From: Vitrella brassicaformis CCMP3155
Taxonomy: Eukaryota; Protista; Chromerida
Reading direction: 5' to 3'
Assembly (NCBI GenBank): GCA_001179505.1
Contig: CDMY01000802.1
Coordinates: forward strand, 62,001-126,000
Length of the DNA: 64,000 nt
Shown: positions 14,084-50,520 of the stretch, piece by piece
Layout of the letters: each line of letters starts with the position of its first letter
Numbering within the stretch: the stretch's first letter is position 1
Translations under genes and position numbers: made by a program
The notes under the pieces: generated by a model
Seen by the model: only the letters and a program-made list of their open reading frames with translations
The model's database searches: none
Told to the model about the DNA's origin: nothing

Positions 14084-15033
14084 ATGCCGACTGTGTGGAG
14101 TGATCTCATGCTGATGACGATGGCGGCGTGGACATGTGTTGCTGAAGCGAGACCACCCGCACAACAGGTACACACATCGGTGGCTCGACCCATTCACCCA
14201 TCCACTCATTTGATGCTTCGCTCTGGTCCATGGCTGACTCTTGTGGTCAGGTCTATGAGCGGGGCCTGCAGGGATTGTCTGGCGGCACATCGCTGTCTGC
14301 GTCGGAGTATGAGGCGCTGCTTGGCCTGCTGGGGGGCAATGACACCACACGACTCACATCACTCTACCGGTAGATACACATCATGCCAACAGTGCTGGGA
14401 TGATGGGCAGATTCCGTGTGTGTGTGTGTCTGTATGTGTGTGTGTAGGACGTCTGTGCACGGCACCACTTATGACGACCTGCTGGACCGAGTGGGCGACG
14501 CAAAGCCTCTCGTGTTTGTTATCAGGAAGGACAAGTATGTCTTCGGCGCCTTCATCAGTGACAGCCTGCGGCTGCCCGACGACCCCACCGCTTGGCACTA
14601 CTACGACTGTCACAAATGGTATTTCTCACTGTCCGGCCACTTCGACAAACCGACCAAGATCGTTCTCCCGGAAAGCACGACGGTGCCGCCGAGGATGTGG
14701 GTGGCGGGGAGGGAGGAGAAAACGTTGGGTACGAATGTGCTTATCGGTGGGCAGCTGTGCCTGGGCTGGGCTAACTCTGGCGGTGGTCCGCCTGCTGCCG
14801 ATATCCGCAGCTGCCTTCAGGTGACCTACCGCAGCAATGTGCCTGAGGGCTACACAGGAGAGTGGGATGAGAATGGCGATGCGGTGTTGGGCGGATCTAC
14901 CGTATTCATGGCTGACGAGATTGAGGTGCTGTCACGTGTGCCGCCATCATCAGCGAGGCAGATGGGTGTGTGGCTGTCGTTCTGTCTGTGGCTCTCGTCA
15001 TTCCTGTTTTCCATGTCCTATCGCATGATGTGA
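14084..15033 (+). CDS. Signal-peptide TLDc-domain protein (3 exons), copy 1
   Basis: Exon1 MPTVWSDLMLMTMAAWTCVAEARPPAQQ; exon2 ..LLGLLGGNDTTRLTSLYR; exon3 TSVHGTTYDDLLDRVGDAKPLVFVIRKDKYVFGAFIS..WYFSLSGHF..LGGSTVFMADEIEVL, with TLDc hallmarks LYR..HG, FGAF, F..DEIEV. Confidence 0.85.
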
Positions 15034-26719: not shown

Positions 26720-27549
26720 TCACTGTTCCACATTCACCCACAGCACTTCTATCTCGTCCGCCATAAACTCATACGACCCACCCAGATAAGCATCGCCCTC
26801 CCCATCCCCGGCCCCCGTGTAGCCCTCAGGCACGTCGTCGCTGCCGATGTACTGAAGGCAGCTGCGGATGTCGTCAGCAGGCTGCTGACTGCCATGGCCA
26901 CCAAAGCCCAACTCCAGCTCCGTACCGATAGCCATATTCACCAATTCTTCCGCCTCCGCCCCTGTCACATACACAAAGTGCCTCTCTCGGTCGATGTCAA
27001 TCTTGGTCGGCTTGGGGAAGTGGCCGGCCAGTGAGAACCACAACACATCACTGTCGTATCTGTGGCTGTCGGTCGGGCCGTCGGGCATCTGGATACCCTC
27101 ACTGATGTAGGCGCCGAACAGATACTGGTCCTTCCTGATCACCAACACGACAGGCCCCAAGCCGCTCGCGTAGCCCAGCAGATCCCAATAACTGGTGCCG
27201 TCCACAGACGTTCTGCACACCACACACACGCGCGCACAACACACGGAGAATCATCGGCCAGCTGTTGTCAGGGCGTGTGTGTGTCTACCGGTAGCGTGTG
27301 TCGAGTTCCGTGGCGTTGAGGAGACCGAGCAGCCCCTCTTGTTCAGACATAGACAGCGACGTGACGATTGGCCGGGACTGCATTCGACGGACCTGCACCG
27401 GCTGAGACTCGTGAGTGAGTGAACACCCAGGAATGCATCAATCACATGGCATGTGGACATACCTGTTGTGCACGTCTCGCCTCAACGTGGTCCCACGCCA
27501 CACAAAGAAACATCACCATCAGCATGAGAGCACTCCACGCAGCCGCCAT
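26720..27549 (-). CDS. Signal-peptide TLDc-domain protein (3 exons), copy 2
   Basis: MAAAWSALMLMVMFLCVAWDHVEARRAQQ / ..LLGLLNATELDTRYR / TSVDGTSYWDLL..KDQYLFGAYIS..WFSLAGHF..LGGSYEFMADEIEVLWVNVEQ*. Confidence 0.85.
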
Positions 27550-27740
27550 CGTGTGAACTAAGGGCAAGAGGACGAGAGAGGATGAGAGAGCAAACAGATT
27601 TCTGTTTGTTGAGTCGGAAGACGAAGACGAAGACACAGAGAGGAGGAAGAGGAGAGAGAGAGAGAGTCGAGGAGATCTTCGAGGGATTTGTAAGGCGAGC
27701 TGAAGCTAGTACCCTAGCCCAGTTCAATTAAAAGCCACGC

Positions 27741-27779
27741 ACCCTAGGGTTTGGGCAGTAGGGCTTAGGGTTTAGGGTT
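27741..27779. repeat. Short telomere-like motif cluster (TTAGGG/TTTAGGG) in a divergent promoter
   Basis: accctagggtttggg..cttagggtttagggtt between head-to-head TLDc and NYN-TLDc starts. Confidence 0.45.
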
Positions 27780-27970
27780 CCCTGAGCCGCTGAGAACAGT
27801 GCTCTCTCCCGATTGTTGGCGAGATCTCTGAGTGGGTGGCTGCCAAAGCTTAGTAGCGGACAGGTACGAGAAAATGAGCATCACTCATTCGCATCGATTC
27901 ACTTATTCTCTTGCCCTGCATGCATGTGGGTTGTGATTGCTTTGCAGGTTGGAGCACCCGTTGGGACAGC

Positions 27971-28995
27971 ATGGCGTTGACGAAGCCGAAAGCCGTGTTC
28001 ATCGTCGATGGGTCCTACATACAGGCGCGAATTCGCTCACACACATGCAGCAGGAAACGGCCGAATGGCGAGTGTACGTGTGATTTGTTTGTTGTCTTGT
28101 TGGTGTGTTCAGGACAGCTTCAAGGCGAGGCGGGGGTCCGACATGAGTGGTGACGTGTGCCTCAAAATGCTCGAGTATGCGGCGGCCACGCTGGGAGTGG
28201 ACAACGTCCAGACGTACTTTGTCGACGGAGATCCTGACAAATGGTGACACTTACAGACACAGAGCGCTTTACGCCATACAGCTCTCCTGGCTGTGCTTCC
28301 TGTAGGTACTCGAAGGTGGCTCGCGGCAGGACCGCAGATCTGATTCAGAAGAAGAACAAGCGCATCGTCCTCCACGACCACTTGCGTCACCAGCGGTGCA
28401 TCAGCTCGCGAGTCACCGTGGAGCTGTGCGATTTCAAGAAGCAGAGCGTGGGCTACAACGAGAGAGGAGAAAGGCTCCAAGGTGAAAGGGACGACCGTCA
28501 GGGTGTGGGTGTGTGACGTACAATCTCTGTGTCTGTCTGTCTGTCTGTCTGTCAGGTTGGGTTCAGGGTGGCGACGTCATGATAGTTCGCAGGATGCTCA
28601 AAACGGCATTTGGTAAGTCGGCGAAGCAAGGCCATGACGACGGAGAATGACTCGCATGTGTCGTTGGCCGCATCAGAGAACTCGCGCATCGGTGCAAGGG
28701 AGTCCGCAGCGTCTTCATCAGCCGAGTGCAGTGACGGAATCACAACAATCGTCCTGTAAGTACACAAACGGGGCAAGAGAGAGAGAGGGACAACATGACA
28801 CACATCGGTTGATGCATTGCTTCAGGGTTGCGGGTGACAAGGACTTCTCGGACATCATCGACGACTGCCGCCAGCTGGGGCTCAAGGTGGCCATCTGCGG
28901 ATATGAACATAACATGGCGTAAGACACACACATGCAGACACACTCGGCGAGTGGCACACCAACTCTTTCCCACTCTCCCTTTCCGTGTGTGTGTA

Positions 28996-29032
<37 letters not shown>

Positions 29033-30044
29033 GGGTGAGTTGAAGGAAAAGCCCAATGAGATTCGCATCATCTATTTGGACCAGTGGCCCGCCGACAGCA
29101 GCGAAGGCGCGAGGCAGCGCAAAGCCAGTAGCCCTTCCACCCGATTGCAGCCCAGACCCACGCCTCAGGTACGCTCATTCATATGAGCCAGCAGCCAGAC
29201 ACACGTGAGGCCCTCTGCCCCGTTTGTGTCGATGTGCAGCCTTCGTTTGAGCACGGCGGCCCCTTTGCCAACCGGCGGCAAGCGCCGCCAGCTGGTAGGC
29301 CCAGCTGCCAGCCGTACAAATGTGTGTATGTGGATGGCTATGTGTGTACATACATAATAGGTGGCGACGGCTCGTTTAGTGGTGTGGCTGCTGCTGCTGT
29401 GTGGAAGTCATCGAAGGACGTCCTCGATCGCATATTCCCTCAGTGGCTGGGGCGCGCCACAGAGCTGAAGGTGCTCTACCGGTAAGTCGGTGACACACAC
29501 CTGCAGTGGTGCAGGTTGCATGGCGTGTGTCTGTGCCTTCGCGCTTGTGATGTCTATCAGGTCTAGTCACCACGGTGTTACGTATGGTGACCTGCTCGAC
29601 CGTGTGGGCGCCGAGAAGCCGCTGGCGGTCATCATCCACAAGGACCAATACCACTTTGGCGTGTACATCAAGGGCGGCCTCCAGCTGCCCGACGACCCAA
29701 GCAAGAGCCGCACAACAGAATGTCGTGTATGGTATTTCTCGCTGACCGACCACTTCGGCCAGCCGACCAAGATCGACATCGACCCACGTCTGCAGTTCGT
29801 GGAGGTGGCGGGGAGGGAGGGGTCTGTGAATAGTGGGTGTGTGTCAATCGGTGGGCGTCTGCAGCTGGGTGTCGCCCATTGTGGGCGGCCTGCTGGGGAC
29901 CTTTTCAGCTGCTGCCAGCTTACCCCCAGCTGTTATGTGCCTGCGGGCTACATGGGGCTGACGAATAGCAGGGGCGATGCTCTGCTGGGTGGGTCGGAGC
30001 TGTTCCATGCGGATGCGATAGAGGTGTTCCATGTGGGGCAGTGA
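27971..30044 (+). CDS. NYN (LabA/DUF88, PIN-like ribonuclease) domain fused to a TLDc domain
   Basis: MALTKPKAVFIVDGSYIQ / ..YFVDG.. / QGGDVMIVRRMLKTAF / GITTIVLVAGDKDFSDIIDDCRQLGLKVAICGY (NYN) / linker / ..WLGRATELKVLYR / SSHHGVTYGDLLDRVG..YHFGVYI..WYFSL..LGGSELFHADAIEVFHVGQ*. Junction phases are consistent across the NYN-TLDc boundary. Confidence 0.8.
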
Positions 30045-30222
30045 GTGAGTGAGGCGGTGGGGAGTGGGATTGCTGTTAGTTGGTGTGTGCATAGGTCGGT
30101 CCATCTGCCTAGGTGTGTTGACAGAATGCGGCTGTGTGAGGGGGGACCCACGTGAATGTATGTGCAATAGTGACAGGACCGTGCGGATGAACGATCAATC
30201 AATTCTTCTCGGTCGCATGCAA

Positions 30223-30650
30223 ATGTGTCCACGCAGCTCAGCAAATAGTCGATAAATCCACGAGCACCGAACACCACACACATTACGATAGCCAAGGGCT
30301 GCAGCAAGCCCTCTACACCATCCCCTCACCGCTTCGTTCGCTCGTTAGGTGCTCATTACAGACAGACACACACACACACACACACGTTAGGCAGAAAGGC
30401 CGTGGAGATCACAGGGAATCGTCAGGTGATGGTTCGCTGTTTAGGTCAATCGAGCCTGCCTACGTTCATCGACGCATGAATGCATACACCCATTGAGGCG
30501 TCCGTCCATCTACACGTACTGGCAGTCGCACGGGCGAGTGTGTGTGTGTGTGTGTGTTTTGACAGTGCGTGTTTTGAGTGGATGACAGTGTGTGTGAATA
30601 ATTCAATGACCAAACGAAGAAACGACAGTATATCAATACGCACCGACGAT
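30223..30650. repeat. Dispersed repeat R, composite partial copy
   Basis: 30223-30315 is the reverse complement of 53468-53562; 30440-30650 matches 32536-32745. Confidence 0.75.
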
Positions 30651-31281: not shown

Positions 31282-32059
31282 TGCGCAAATGTGTGAGTGT
31301 GTGTGTAATGCAGGACATCTGTTCACGGCACCAACTATAGCGATTTGCACGACCGTGTCGGTGACAACACCGGCATGGACATCACTACATGAGGCACGCA
31401 ATCTCGCTGCTTCTCTTCTTCTCTGTTAGGTCTTCGCTACCGTCTTCGCATCTCGACGGAACCACCTGCTAGACGGAGTGGGCGACGCGGGGCCTCTCGT
31501 GGTGGTCATCAAGAAGGATCAGTACGTGTTCGGCGCCTTCATCAGTGGCGGCATCCAGTCGCCCGACCACACGGCAGGGGGCGGCTTCTATAAATGTGAT
31601 GGTACGGCTATCTTTCACTACGATATGATCTACGACGGATTTCGCACATACGAGTGTGACGTGTGGCACTTCTCGCTGGCCGGCCACTTCCCCCAACCGA
31701 CCAAGATAGAAGGAAACCCAGAGCGGCAGTATGTGGGGCTTCTTTCGGAAAGATGGGCGAGTATGTATATCGGAGGCCCTGGGCGTCTGTATTTGGGGCC
31801 TGCTGCCGACATCCGAAACTGCTCTCAGTGGACGGACAGCGAGTATGTGCCTGATGGCTATACGGGAGAGAGGATTGAGTTGGATGGCGATGCTTTCTTG
31901 GGTGGGTCGTACGAGTTCACGGCTGATGAGATCGAGGTACTGCATGGGAGCGTACAGCAGCAGCAGACTGAGGGCAGGACGAAATCGGTCGCCAGCCGCA
32001 CGCAAGTGGCCACGGCGGTGCTCGTGGGGCTGACCGCGTTCATCTATGCCGCATCTTGA
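31092..32059 (+). CDS. TLDc-domain gene, copy 4, with duplicated/broken exon start and C-terminal hydrophobic tail; no signal-peptide exon found
   Basis: Exon VHLRRVQ..TRLTSLYR (31092-31210); first TSVHGTNYSDLHDRVG copy stops at ~31391; second copy resumes LLDGVGDAGPLVVVIKKDQYVFGAFIS..FTADEIEVL..VATAVLVGLTAFIYAAS*. Confidence 0.6.
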
Positions 32060-33137: not shown

Positions 33138-33976
33138 CTACTGCACTACATGCAACACCTCTACATACCCACCGAGATACACACTGCCAGTAAGCTCCTC
33201 TCTGACCCTCGTATAGCCCTCAGGCACATACTCGCTGTCGCTGACCTGAAAGCAGCTGCGGATGTCGGAAGAAGGCCCTCGTGGATAATTACCCCAGCCC
33301 AACCACAGAGCCCCACCGATAAGCACATTTGCGGACTCATCCGCATTCCCCTCCCTCCCCGCCACAGCCACATACTGCTCCTCTCGTGGGATCTCGATCT
33401 TGATCGGTCCACCAAAAGCGTCGGCCAGTGAGAACCACCACACATCAGACTCGTACTCGCGGCTGTCGAACGGATCGTCGGGCAGCCGAAGACCCTTGCT
33501 GATATAGACGCCGAAGTCGTGTGGACCGTTCCTGACCACAAACACGATAGGCTTCGCGTCGCCCACTCGGTCCAGCAGGTCGCCGTAGGTGGTGCCGTGC
33601 ACAGACGTCCTACACACACACACACACACACACACAGACATGCACACAGACAGAGAGCCATCTGCCAGCTGTTCGTGTCAGGGCATGAGATGTGTGTCTA
33701 CCGGTAGAGTGAGGTGAGTTGTGTGGTGTCATTGCCCCCCAGCAAATCCAGCAGCCCCTCATACTCTGACGCAGACAGCGACGTGTCGTCAGGCGGGGAG
33801 GCCTCCTGCACACGACGCAAATGCACCTGAGCACGAGCCATGCACACCGGAGCATCAAAAGAATGAATATGAGTGAATGGGATGGTGTGCGTGTGTGTGT
33901 CTACCTGTTGTGCCTTGACAGCCGTCCATGCCACAGAGCAGAGAATCAGCAGGACACCCACGGCACGGGCCGCCAT
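33138..33976 (-). CDS. Signal-peptide TLDc-domain protein (3 exons), copy 5, short deletion in terminal motif
   Basis: MAARAVGVLLILCSVAWTAVKAQQ / VHLRRVQ..TQLTSLYR / TSVHGTTYGDLLDRVG..LGGYVEVLHVVQ*. It lacks the SxxFxADE segment seen in the siblings. Confidence 0.8.
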
Positions 33977-49647: not shown

Positions 49648-50520
49648 TCACTGCTCCATCAAATGCAGCACCTCTATCTCGTCCGCCATGAAGGCACGCG
49701 ACCCACCCAGCACCGCATCGCCAAGGCGATCCCTCACTCCCGTGTAGCTACCAGGCATAGAGAAGTGGGAGATGTACTGACGGCAGCTGCGGATGTCGGC
49801 AGCAGTCTTGCCGCCATGGTCACGGCAGCCCAACCCCAGCCACAGACACCCACCGATGGACATACTCGCACTATACGCCCTTTCCTGGCTCCCCGCCACC
49901 CACACAGACTGCTGCACTCGTGTGAAATCGATTTTGGTCGGTGTGGCGAAGTGGCCGGCCAGTGAGAAATGCCACATCACTGTGGTACATGCGGCAATCG
50001 TTAGGGCATCGGACAGCAGCAGGCCGGCACTGATGAAGGCGCCGAAGACGTATAGGTCCTTGCGTATGATGAACACCAGGCCGGTCATGTCGCCCATACA
50101 GCGCAGCAGATCGTCATACACTTGTGCCGTCACGCGACGAGCTGACACACACAGCCGGGGCGGCAGGAGGAGGAATGGCCAGTTACTGATGTTGCAGTCA
50201 CATGCATACGTCCGATTCGCACCGATAGAGAAGTTTGAGCCCTCTTTTGCCGTCGATCATATCAAGCAGGGCAATGTAGTGCGAAGGTGTGAGTGACGTG
50301 CCGGCAGGCAGACGGACCTGCACGACACAACCACAAGATGGAATGCGACAATCCACCCACTGCATGCGAATGCAAAGAATGTTCGTGTGTGAGTACCAGG
50401 GCAGCCCTCGTCATCCTGACGATGGCCAACAGGACCCACACCAACACTGAGGCCGACGCGCGCAGCACGGAGCCGCACACGGACACAATGATCGACACGA
50501 GCACGCCGACCAGCGGCAGC
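49648..50520 (-). pseudogene. TLDc gene copy 6, frameshifted
   Basis: After ..GLKLLYR the next exon reads SSRDGTSV* because of one extra G (ggcacaagtGtatgac); TLDc frame resumes YDDLL..FMADEIEVLHLMEQ*. A further local frame distortion is present at YHSDV(W). Confidence 0.65.

What the first reader, a model, noticed from the sequence alone, without database searches (positions are those of the whole stretch)
27971..30044. Spliced NYN ribonuclease-TLDc fusion gene
Seen: an N-terminal NYN/LabA-type domain keeps the acidic residues typical of the family (FIVDGSY, QGGDV, VAGDKDF). Phase-consistent exons (CAG|gt..ag|CCT; G|gt..ag|GT; CG|gt..ag|G) run without a stop into a complete TLDc domain. Established: NYN domains are PIN-fold, metal-dependent RNases; characterised TLDc proteins (OXR1, NCOA7, MEAK7, yeast Oxr1/Rtc5) are V-ATPase-associated or stress-protective. 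I know of no characterised NYN-TLDc protein. The TLDc part has the same phase-2 intron after LYR as the neighbouring TLDc genes but no signal peptide. Inference: exon shuffling produced an RNase tethered to V-ATPase-bearing compartments or gated by stress, a candidate new RNA-decay or defence module.
Basis: partly seen in the sequence, partly recalled or inferred. Interest (0 to 1): 0.82.

Follow-up and report, generated by a model that had tools for sequence, protein, structure and literature searches.

The report
Expressed NYN nuclease-TLDc fusion gene
This is a real, spliced and transcribed gene of the alga Vitrella brassicaformis that joins an RNA-cutting NYN domain to a TLDc domain; the protein is already in public databases, unstudied, and what the pairing does is not known.

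Summary
A 10-exon gene (CDS 27971-30044, +) encodes a 461-aa protein. Spliced transcript contigs from two studies run from the 5' UTR through every NYN exon into the TLDc exon and 3' UTR.

My model is letter for letter the public 'uncharacterized protein' of Vitrella brassicaformis CCMP3155 (P0125). It passes Pfam's cut-offs for NYN and for TLD. A predicted structure matches solved NYN domains (Z 11.5 and 10.8) and TLDc domains (Z about 15). The four catalytic aspartate positions of MARF1 have counterparts: D13, D56, D127 and D170.

The gene is not unique. I found two more NYN-TLDc genes in this genome (contigs C339 and C516). The scan had already noted NYN-TLDc genes on other DNA of this genome. 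The TLDc part belongs to a Vitrella-restricted family of at least 150 copies. Some members carry signal-peptide-like N-termini; others carry RING or transposase-type domains.

Between the two closest paralogs, NYN is under strong constraint (dN/dS 0.18) and TLDc evolves fast (0.73). Nothing here tests the V-ATPase or stress idea. No paper describes the pairing. Verdict: a lineage-specific new combination of two known domains, of moderate interest.

The parts
27778..27863 (+). 5' UTR exon. The first base is the start of transcript contig X7; the true transcription start is not known.
   Evidence: table 8 and joint 27860>27945 (GT..AG, cut +3). There is no ATG in the spliced 5' UTR.
27948..28024 (+). 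Exon holding the rest of the 5' UTR and CDS exon 1. ATG at 27971; codes aa 1-18, MALTKPKAVFIVDGSYIQ, with D13.
28025..28112 (+). Intron 1, 88 nt, GC-AG.
   Evidence: Joint 28021>28110 with 4 ambiguous bases. The sequence reads ACAG|gcgcga...ttcag|GACA. The C339 paralog has the same GC donor.
28113..28243 (+). CDS exon 2 (aa 19-62), NYN, with the invariant DGDPDKW motif (D56).
28306..28481 (+). CDS exon 3 (aa 62-121), NYN.
28556..28612 (+). CDS exon 4 (aa 121-140), GWVQGGDVMIV with D127.
   Evidence: table 8 (record coordinates; X1 record 2).
28677..28755 (+). CDS exon 5 (aa 140-166), a Ser/Ala-rich loop and the start of strand 161-167.
28826..28918 (+). CDS exon 6 (aa 166-197), VAGDKDF with D170 and D172.
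   Evidence: This exon alone hits Pfam NYN at E 0.01.
29033..29168 (+). CDS exon 7 (aa 197-242): the end of NYN and the start of the disordered linker.
29240..29294 (+). CDS exon 8 (aa 243-261), linker.
   Evidence: Joints 29165>29237 and 29293>29360 in X6 and X7.
29361..29481 (+). CDS exon 9 (aa 261-301), the N-terminal helix of TLDc up to 'LYR'.
29561..30044 (+). CDS exon 10 (aa 301-461 plus stop), the TLDc core.
   Evidence: This exon alone hits Pfam TLD at E 2e-4. pLDDT is 95-98 and Z is about 15 to solved TLDc domains.
30045..30504 (+). 3' UTR, as far as contig X6 reaches.
   Evidence: table 8 (X6 record 14: 29560-30504).

Best explanation
A single nuclear gene of Vitrella brassicaformis encodes a 461-aa protein without a signal peptide. 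It has three parts: an N-terminal LabA/MARF1-type NYN domain (aa 1-215), a disordered linker of about 55 residues, and a C-terminal TLDc domain (aa about 270-461).

Shown: the gene is real, spliced and transcribed. Both folds are present. The four acidic positions that MARF1 needs for catalysis are kept. A whole-gene duplication kept the fusion intact in a second locus, with strong purifying selection on NYN.

Inferred: the NYN part is a Mg2+/Mn2+-dependent endoribonuclease. The protein has no recognisable RNA-binding domain, so the fast-evolving TLDc part most likely acts as a partner-binding module that places or gates the nuclease. The partner is unknown. I hold V-ATPase to be unlikely, because the TLDc is one of a large lineage-specific family with many different N-terminal fusions.
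For: - Transcripts: spliced contigs from two studies span all exons. No second 100% copy exists in the assembly, so the spliced form is not a retrocopy.
- Identity: the model equals public protein P0125.
- Pfam: NYN 25.9 bits and TLD 29.2 bits, both over the cut-off.
- ESM Atlas: for aa 1-215 the nearest clusters are NYN families, feature score 0.90 and structure TM 0.70.
- Structure: in the AF2 model TLDc has pLDDT 95-98, NYN 50-80 and the linker about 32. VIA Z is 15.3-13.5 to NCOA7, mEAK7, Skywalker, OXR2 and Oxr1p. It is 11.5 to 2qip and 10.8 to mouse MARF1 NYN (5yaa).
- Active site: MARF1 needs four Asp, at the C-terminal ends of strands 1, 2 and 4 and at the N-terminus of helix 3 (PMC6217404). 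Here D13 ends strand 7-13, D56 follows strand 48-55, D127 opens helix 126-141 and D170 follows strand 161-167. D56, D127 and D170 are invariant columns in the paralog alignment; D13 is kept in the three rows that reach it.
- Paralog: the C339 gene has the same 10-exon layout. dS is about 0.6 in all three segments; dN/dS is 0.18 for NYN, 0.56 for the linker and 0.73 for TLDc.
- TLDc by sequence: a profile of the Vitrella family hits solved TLDc chains, 4acj at 6.3e-5 and NCOA7 at 2e-4.
Against: - No nuclease activity has been measured.
- The NYN half of the model has only moderate confidence. I could not inspect coordinates, so the active-site geometry is inferred from secondary-structure positions alone.
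- The Asn that MARF1 has three residues after the first Asp is Tyr here, and its Ser270 equivalent is Ala168.
- TLDc dN/dS of 0.73, and a long terminal branch for this copy in the family tree (0.91 against a median of 0.63), could mean the TLDc half is decaying and not serving a function.
- Contigs cannot exclude additional NYN-only or TLDc-only isoforms.
Confidence: 0.6

Rival explanations
1. One reading: the TLDc domain docks the nuclease on V-ATPase (as OXR1, NCOA7, mEAK7, Oxr1p and Rtc5p dock), so that RNA decay is tied to acidic compartments or to oxidative stress.
For: - All characterised TLDc proteins bind V-ATPase (PMC8608904).
- The fold matches TLDc chains solved on V-ATPase at Z about 15.
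- The family profile aligns the conserved Gly/Ser, FG and C-terminal Glu positions mutated in Ncoa7. By eye these correspond in P0125 to G306/T308, G334 and E455. This is my mapping and was not checked on a structure.
- This copy lacks a signal peptide, so it could meet the cytosolic V1 sector.
Against: - The TLDc is a divergent member (Pfam 29 bits) of a family of at least 150 copies that returned only 124 cluster representatives in 1.84 billion proteins.
- About one in six representatives have signal-peptide-like N-termini. Others carry RING or Tc5-HTH domains. A common V1-binding role is therefore unlikely.
- TLDc dN/dS is 0.73 between the paralogs, not what a conserved docking surface would give.
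- The residues above are mostly fold-determining.
- More canonical TLDc proteins exist in the same genome, for example P0025 at 74 bits.
Confidence: 0.1
2. TLDc is the shared module of a lineage-specific stress or conflict (immune-like) gene family in Vitrella. NYN, RING and other N-terminal domains are interchangeable effectors, and NYN-TLDc is the RNA-degrading effector.
For: - A huge lineage-specific expansion arranged in tandem clusters.
- Varied fusions: RING in up to 8 of the 125 proteins scanned (124 representatives plus P0125), Tc5-HTH in 9, NYN in 3 and LNR in 2.
- Secreted-looking members.
- A fast-evolving TLDc beside a constrained NYN.
- At least three NYN-TLDc genes.
Against: This rests on guilt by architecture alone. 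No expression response, no partner and no pathogen are known. A high dN/dS may be plain relaxation. I did not test for positive selection by site.
Confidence: 0.2
3. The gene is a transcribed but functionally irrelevant chimera, or one whose TLDc half is decaying. The NYN half works as in the NYN-only paralogs and the TLDc tail is a passenger.
For: - TLDc dN/dS is 0.73 and linker dN/dS is 0.56.
- Three sister NYN genes (C463/P0126, C524/P0127 and C628) carry unrelated low-complexity tails in place of TLDc.
- P0033's TLDc lacks an 8-residue stretch near its C-terminus.
Against: - Both paralogs keep open frames through all ten exons at dS about 0.6.
- The TLDc of this copy folds at pLDDT 95-98 and keeps the family's conserved positions.
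- A third, more distant NYN-TLDc gene also exists.
Confidence: 0.1

Closest known systems
MARF1 / LabA-type NYN domains (Pfam PF01936; structures 5yaa, 2qip)
   Same: Same fold (Z 10.8 and 11.5). It passes the Pfam NYN cut-off. Asp residues sit at the four positions that MARF1 needs for Mg2+/Mn2+-dependent ssRNA cleavage.
   Different: No sequence-level hit to any solved NYN. There is an extra insertion between strand 2 and helix 3 (helices 59-90 and a hairpin at 99-112). It has no LOTUS/OST-HTH, RRM, KH or CCCH partner domain; TLDc takes that place. The NYN subfamily was found only in Vitrella plus one metagenome contig.
TLDc proteins OXR1, NCOA7, TBC1D24/Skywalker, mEAK7 and yeast Oxr1p/Rtc5p
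   Same: Same fold (Z 12-15.3, rmsd about 3 Angstrom over 150-160 residues). It passes the Pfam TLD cut-off. A profile of the family reaches these chains by sequence.
   Different: In the known proteins the N-terminal partners are LysM/GRAM, TBC or a myristoylated EF-hand-like region, never a nuclease. Here TLDc belongs to a family of at least 150 copies restricted to one lineage, some with signal-peptide-like N-termini. V-ATPase binding was not tested.
Other NYN-TLDc genes of Vitrella: C339 (P0033) and C516 (P0064)
   Same: Same architecture. C339 has the same 10 exons, including the GC donor, and is 80% identical over NYN. C516 has the same NYN subfamily (E 9e-16 to the A1 profile) followed by TLDc.
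   Different: The TLDc parts are only 51% (C339) and about 38% (C516) identical to this one. The C516 gene is interrupted by assembly gaps, and its public protein is open at the N-terminus.

Membership tests
NYN domain (Pfam PF01936, LabA/MARF1 type; PIN-like superfamily) | Profile match above Pfam's gathering score | tested here: met
   P0125, identical to the model, scores 25.9 bits against a cut-off of 24.2. Residues 1-215 alone score 28.0 bits. Exon by exon, only E6 reached E 0.01.
NYN domain (Pfam PF01936, LabA/MARF1 type; PIN-like superfamily) | PIN-like alpha/beta fold resembling solved NYN domains | tested here: met
   VIA Z is 11.5 to 2qip (146 of 162 residues aligned) and 10.8 to MARF1 5yaa (135 of 150). 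FEN/ExoIX chains follow at Z about 9. Foldseek gives 2qip E 6.6e-4. The Atlas structure search gives TM 0.70 to a NYN cluster. The model's pLDDT in this half is only 50-80.
NYN domain (Pfam PF01936, LabA/MARF1 type; PIN-like superfamily) | Four conserved acidic residues at the ends of strands 1, 2 and 4 and at the start of helix 3 (PMC6217404; PMC5499597) | tested here: met
   D13, D56, D127 and D170 (plus D172) sit at those secondary-structure positions. D56, D127 and D170 are invariant columns in the paralog alignment; D13 is kept in the three rows that reach it. The placement is by secondary structure, not by superposed coordinates.
NYN domain (Pfam PF01936, LabA/MARF1 type; PIN-like superfamily) | Metal-dependent ribonuclease activity | not testable with these tools
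   Needs a biochemical assay.
TLDc domain (Pfam PF07534) | Profile match above Pfam's gathering score | tested here: met
   29.2 bits against 24.5 for the whole protein, and 32.3 bits for residues 255-461. The last exon alone gives 21.7 bits.
TLDc domain (Pfam PF07534) | TLDc fold as in OXR2, NCOA7 and mEAK7 | tested here: met
   pLDDT 95-98. Z is 13.5-15.3 with rmsd 2.8-3.5 Angstrom over 151-162 residues. Foldseek E is 9e-7 to 3e-4.
TLDc domain (Pfam PF07534) | Binding to V-ATPase, the shared property of characterised members (PMC8608904) | not tested
   No Vitrella V-ATPase subunit was available by reference, so no complex job was sent. Indirect evidence argues against it as a family-wide role.

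The most novel reading that the evidence does not exclude
TLDc in Vitrella is the common sensing or adaptor module of a large, fast-evolving, lineage-specific stress or immune-like system. NYN-TLDc is its RNA-degrading effector, switched on or positioned by whatever the TLDc part binds. That would give TLDc a role outside V-ATPase regulation.
Probability: 0.15. Interest if true: 0.7.

Novelty: new variant of a known kind. Interest (0 to 1): 0.4.

Why it matters
Every TLDc protein studied so far regulates V-ATPase, and its biochemical role beyond that is debated. A chromerid alga (a photosynthetic relative of apicomplexan parasites) has more than 150 TLDc genes. These include secreted-looking forms and fusions to a constrained nuclease, to RING fingers and to transposase-type DNA-binding domains. 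That offers a natural experiment on what else the TLDc fold can do.

The NYN-TLDc genes are a tractable entry point, because the nuclease gives an assayable output. The gene itself is one lineage-specific member among at least three, is already in public databases, and has no functional data.

Tried and rejected
- My first guess for intron 1 (GT donor at 28072, acceptor at 28117) was wrong. Transcripts show a GC-AG intron at 28025-28112.
- Exon-by-exon Pfam scans gave only sub-threshold hits. The full-length protein was reached by reference as public protein P0125 and shown by a script to equal the model.
- Sequence searches of each domain, and of the NYN profile, against PDB chains found nothing relevant.
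- The six-frame Pfam NYN search of the genome did not pick up this locus or its paralogs, because the exons are short. The seven loci it did find are other NYN families, and none has this TLDc next to the NYN hit.
- NYN-only paralogs C463, C524 and C628 were checked up to 5.6 kb downstream, as far as the fetched loci reach, and have no TLDc.
- The TLDc tree puts this copy and the C339 copy in one weak clade with two others (93/77). That is compatible with a single origin but not decisive. The equal dS across segments and the identical exon layout are the better evidence that the fusion predates that duplication.
I could verify three.
- No complex prediction, no NYN-only fold and no second Atlas search were run. 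They would not have changed the verdict.
- Two paper searches (TLDc with NYN; Vitrella with TLDc) found nothing relevant.

Full report
**What the sequence is.** The window is C802:62001-126000 of a 72.7-Mb, 1064-contig eukaryotic assembly. Public proteins identical or near-identical to its genes are labelled Vitrella brassicaformis CCMP3155.

**Gene model.** Three-frame translation and splice-site inspection gave a 10-exon open frame. Contigs of four public runs were then laid on 27400-30600.
- X6 (1944 nt) and X7 (1654 nt), from different studies, each hold one intron-less contig.
- Together these two contigs cover a 5' UTR exon (seen in X7, from 27778), a 5' UTR intron (27864-27947), all coding exons, and the 3' UTR (X7 to 30203, X6 to 30504).
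- X1 holds a spliced fragment of exons 3-5. X5 holds only unspliced pieces.
- Two joints next to simple repeats (introns 3 and 6) were filtered from the joint table. The contigs' own coordinates imply them.
- Intron 1 is GC-AG (28025-28112), which replaces my first guess.
- Final CDS: 27971-28024, 28113-28243, 28306-28481, 28556-28612, 28677-28755, 28826-28918, 29033-29168, 29240-29294, 29361-29481 and 29561-30044. This is 1386 nt, or 461 aa.
- The spliced 5' UTR holds no ATG.
- Exons 2, 3 and 10 each have only one 100% match in the genome. The spliced contigs therefore come from RNA of this locus, not from a retrocopy.

**Joined model.** The full-length protein was obtained by reference as follows:
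- A search of cluster representatives with the last exon gave P0033.
- A word search with P0033's NYN region returned P0125. It is 461 aa, from Vitrella brassicaformis CCMP3155, 'uncharacterized protein', with Pfam NYN and TLD precomputed.
- A script showed that P0125 equals my model.

**Domains.**
- Pfam on P0125 gives TLD 29.2 bits (cut-off 24.5, aa 286-459) and NYN 25.9 bits (cut-off 24.2, aa 161-204).
- ESM Atlas places aa 1-215 next to NYN clusters, with feature score 0.90 and structure TM 0.70.
- AlphaFold2 with a 62-row alignment gave TLDc at pLDDT 95-98, NYN at 50-80 and a disordered linker at 215-272.
- Foldseek and VIA-align matched TLDc structures at Z 12-15.3: NCOA7, mEAK7 on V-ATPase, Skywalker, OXR2, Oxr1p and Rtc5p.
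- They matched NYN structures at Z 11.5 (2qip) and 10.8 (mouse MARF1, 5yaa), ahead of FEN-type PIN domains at Z about 9.
- MARF1 needs four Asp, at the ends of strands 1, 2 and 4 and at the start of helix 3, for Mg2+/Mn2+-dependent cleavage of ssRNA (PMC6217404). D13, D56, D127 and D170 occupy those positions here.
- D56, D127 and D170 are invariant columns in the paralog alignment; D13 is kept in the three rows that reach it. The fourth is FVDGDPD.
- A profile of the Vitrella TLDc family reaches solved TLDc chains by sequence: 4acj at 6.3e-5 and NCOA7 at 2e-4. It aligns the conserved Gly/Ser, FG and C-terminal Glu positions that were mutated in Ncoa7 (PMC8608904).

**Context and relatives.**
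- TLDc is hugely expanded. There are 151 six-frame Pfam hits. With this gene's last exon as query, 152 matches came from the 150 scored of 402 candidates, many in tandem on C802, C217, C268 and C286.
- Five more copies lie in this window.
- Across 1.84 billion cluster representatives, only 124 proteins match this TLDc at E <= 0.001. The subfamily is therefore lineage-restricted.
- Pfam was run on 125 proteins: those 124 plus P0125. TLD was found in 103, HTH_Tnp_Tc5 in 9, RING families in up to 8, NYN in 3 and LNR in 2.
- About one in six representatives have a hydrophobic, signal-peptide-like N-terminus. One is the minus-strand neighbour P0035.
- The neighbour and this gene share the phase-2 intron in the Arg codon after 'YR'.
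- The NYN half has four paralogs in the genome: C339, C463, C524 and C628.
- In 5.8 billion proteins, only these and one metagenome fragment match it.
- C339 (P0033) is also NYN-TLDc, with the same ten exons and the same GC donor.
- C516 (P0064) is a third, more distant NYN-TLDc gene, interrupted by assembly gaps.
- C463, C524 and C628 have no TLDc in the sequence I could fetch downstream (up to 5.6 kb; C628 reaches the contig end after about 1.7 kb).
- The scan's earlier notes already report NYN-TLDc genes on other pieces of this genome. One note says 'at least four copies'; I verified three.

**Evolution.** Between this gene and C339, Nei-Gojobori dS is 0.64 (NYN), 0.51 (linker) and 0.60 (TLDc). 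The whole fused gene was therefore duplicated at one time. dN/dS is 0.18 for NYN, 0.56 for the linker and 0.73 for TLDc. A TLDc tree places the two copies in one weakly supported clade with two other members, and this copy has a long branch.

**Reading.**
- The fusion is real and maintained, and its nuclease half is under strong constraint with an intact catalytic set. An active NYN endoribonuclease is the most likely biochemical function.
- There is no RNA-binding partner domain, so the TLDc half most likely supplies targeting or regulation through a protein partner. Its fast evolution fits either diversifying pressure or relaxation.
The size, divergence, partly secreted-looking make-up and promiscuous fusions of the Vitrella family argue against V1 binding as its common role.
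- Strict exon shuffling is not shown, because the border in front of the TLDc helix exon differs in phase from the neighbour's. 'Gene fusion inside a TLDc cluster' is what the data support.

**Novelty.** No paper in the library links NYN with TLDc, or Vitrella with TLDc. The protein is public but unstudied. It is a new, lineage-specific combination of two known domains, one of at least three such genes, and of moderate interest.

Noticed in passing
G000 C339:84825-86885 (L018:3826-5886, minus strand): Closest paralog (P0033, 456 aa), also NYN-TLDc. It has the same ten exons and the same GC donor in intron 1. The public protein starts at an internal Met (MFIVDG...), but the frame continues upstream with an 'MALTKPKA'-like stretch, so the annotated start is probably too short.
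   Followed up: partly
G000 C516 (L029:1053-2764, minus strand; N gaps at L029:513-812 and 2042-2341): A third, more divergent NYN-TLDc gene (P0064, 338 aa, open at the N-terminus), interrupted by assembly gaps. A separate NYN hit lies about 3 kb further downstream on the same strand (C516:32777-32926).
   Followed up: partly
window 14452-14931(+), 26735-27205(-), 31643-31945(+), 33150-33605(-), 49660-50121(-): Five more TLDc last-exon copies in this window. They are part of a genome-wide family: 152 matches from the 150 scored of 402 candidates. Only 124 cluster representatives were found in 1.84 billion public proteins.
   Followed up: partly
TLDc family representatives P0001-P0124 (not window coordinates): Nine of the 125 proteins scanned carry a Tc5/pogo-type transposase DNA-binding domain (HTH_Tnp_Tc5), and up to eight carry RING fingers. 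Transposon-linked spread or domestication in this family was not examined.
   Followed up: no
window 27745-27777: Degenerate TTTAGGG-type (telomere-like) repeats lie directly upstream of the first base covered by the transcript contig (27778). This may be a promoter element or may be chance.
   Followed up: no
window 26720-27636 (minus strand): The neighbouring gene encodes P0035 (222 aa), a small TLDc protein with a signal-peptide-like N-terminus. It is transcribed divergently from the NYN-TLDc gene, about 140 bp from its first transcript-contig base. Contigs in X1, X6 and X7 end in a splice-like loose end at 27463.
   Followed up: partly
window 29183-29485: An in-frame ATG inside intron 7 opens a 100-codon frame that reads through exon 8, intron 8 (66 nt, no stop) and exon 9. 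With retained introns, a TLDc-only product would be possible. No contig supports it.
   Followed up: no
G000 C524 (P0127): A NYN-only paralog has GDSGF in place of GDxDF (the second Asp of the motif is lost) and a long low-complexity tail.
   Followed up: no
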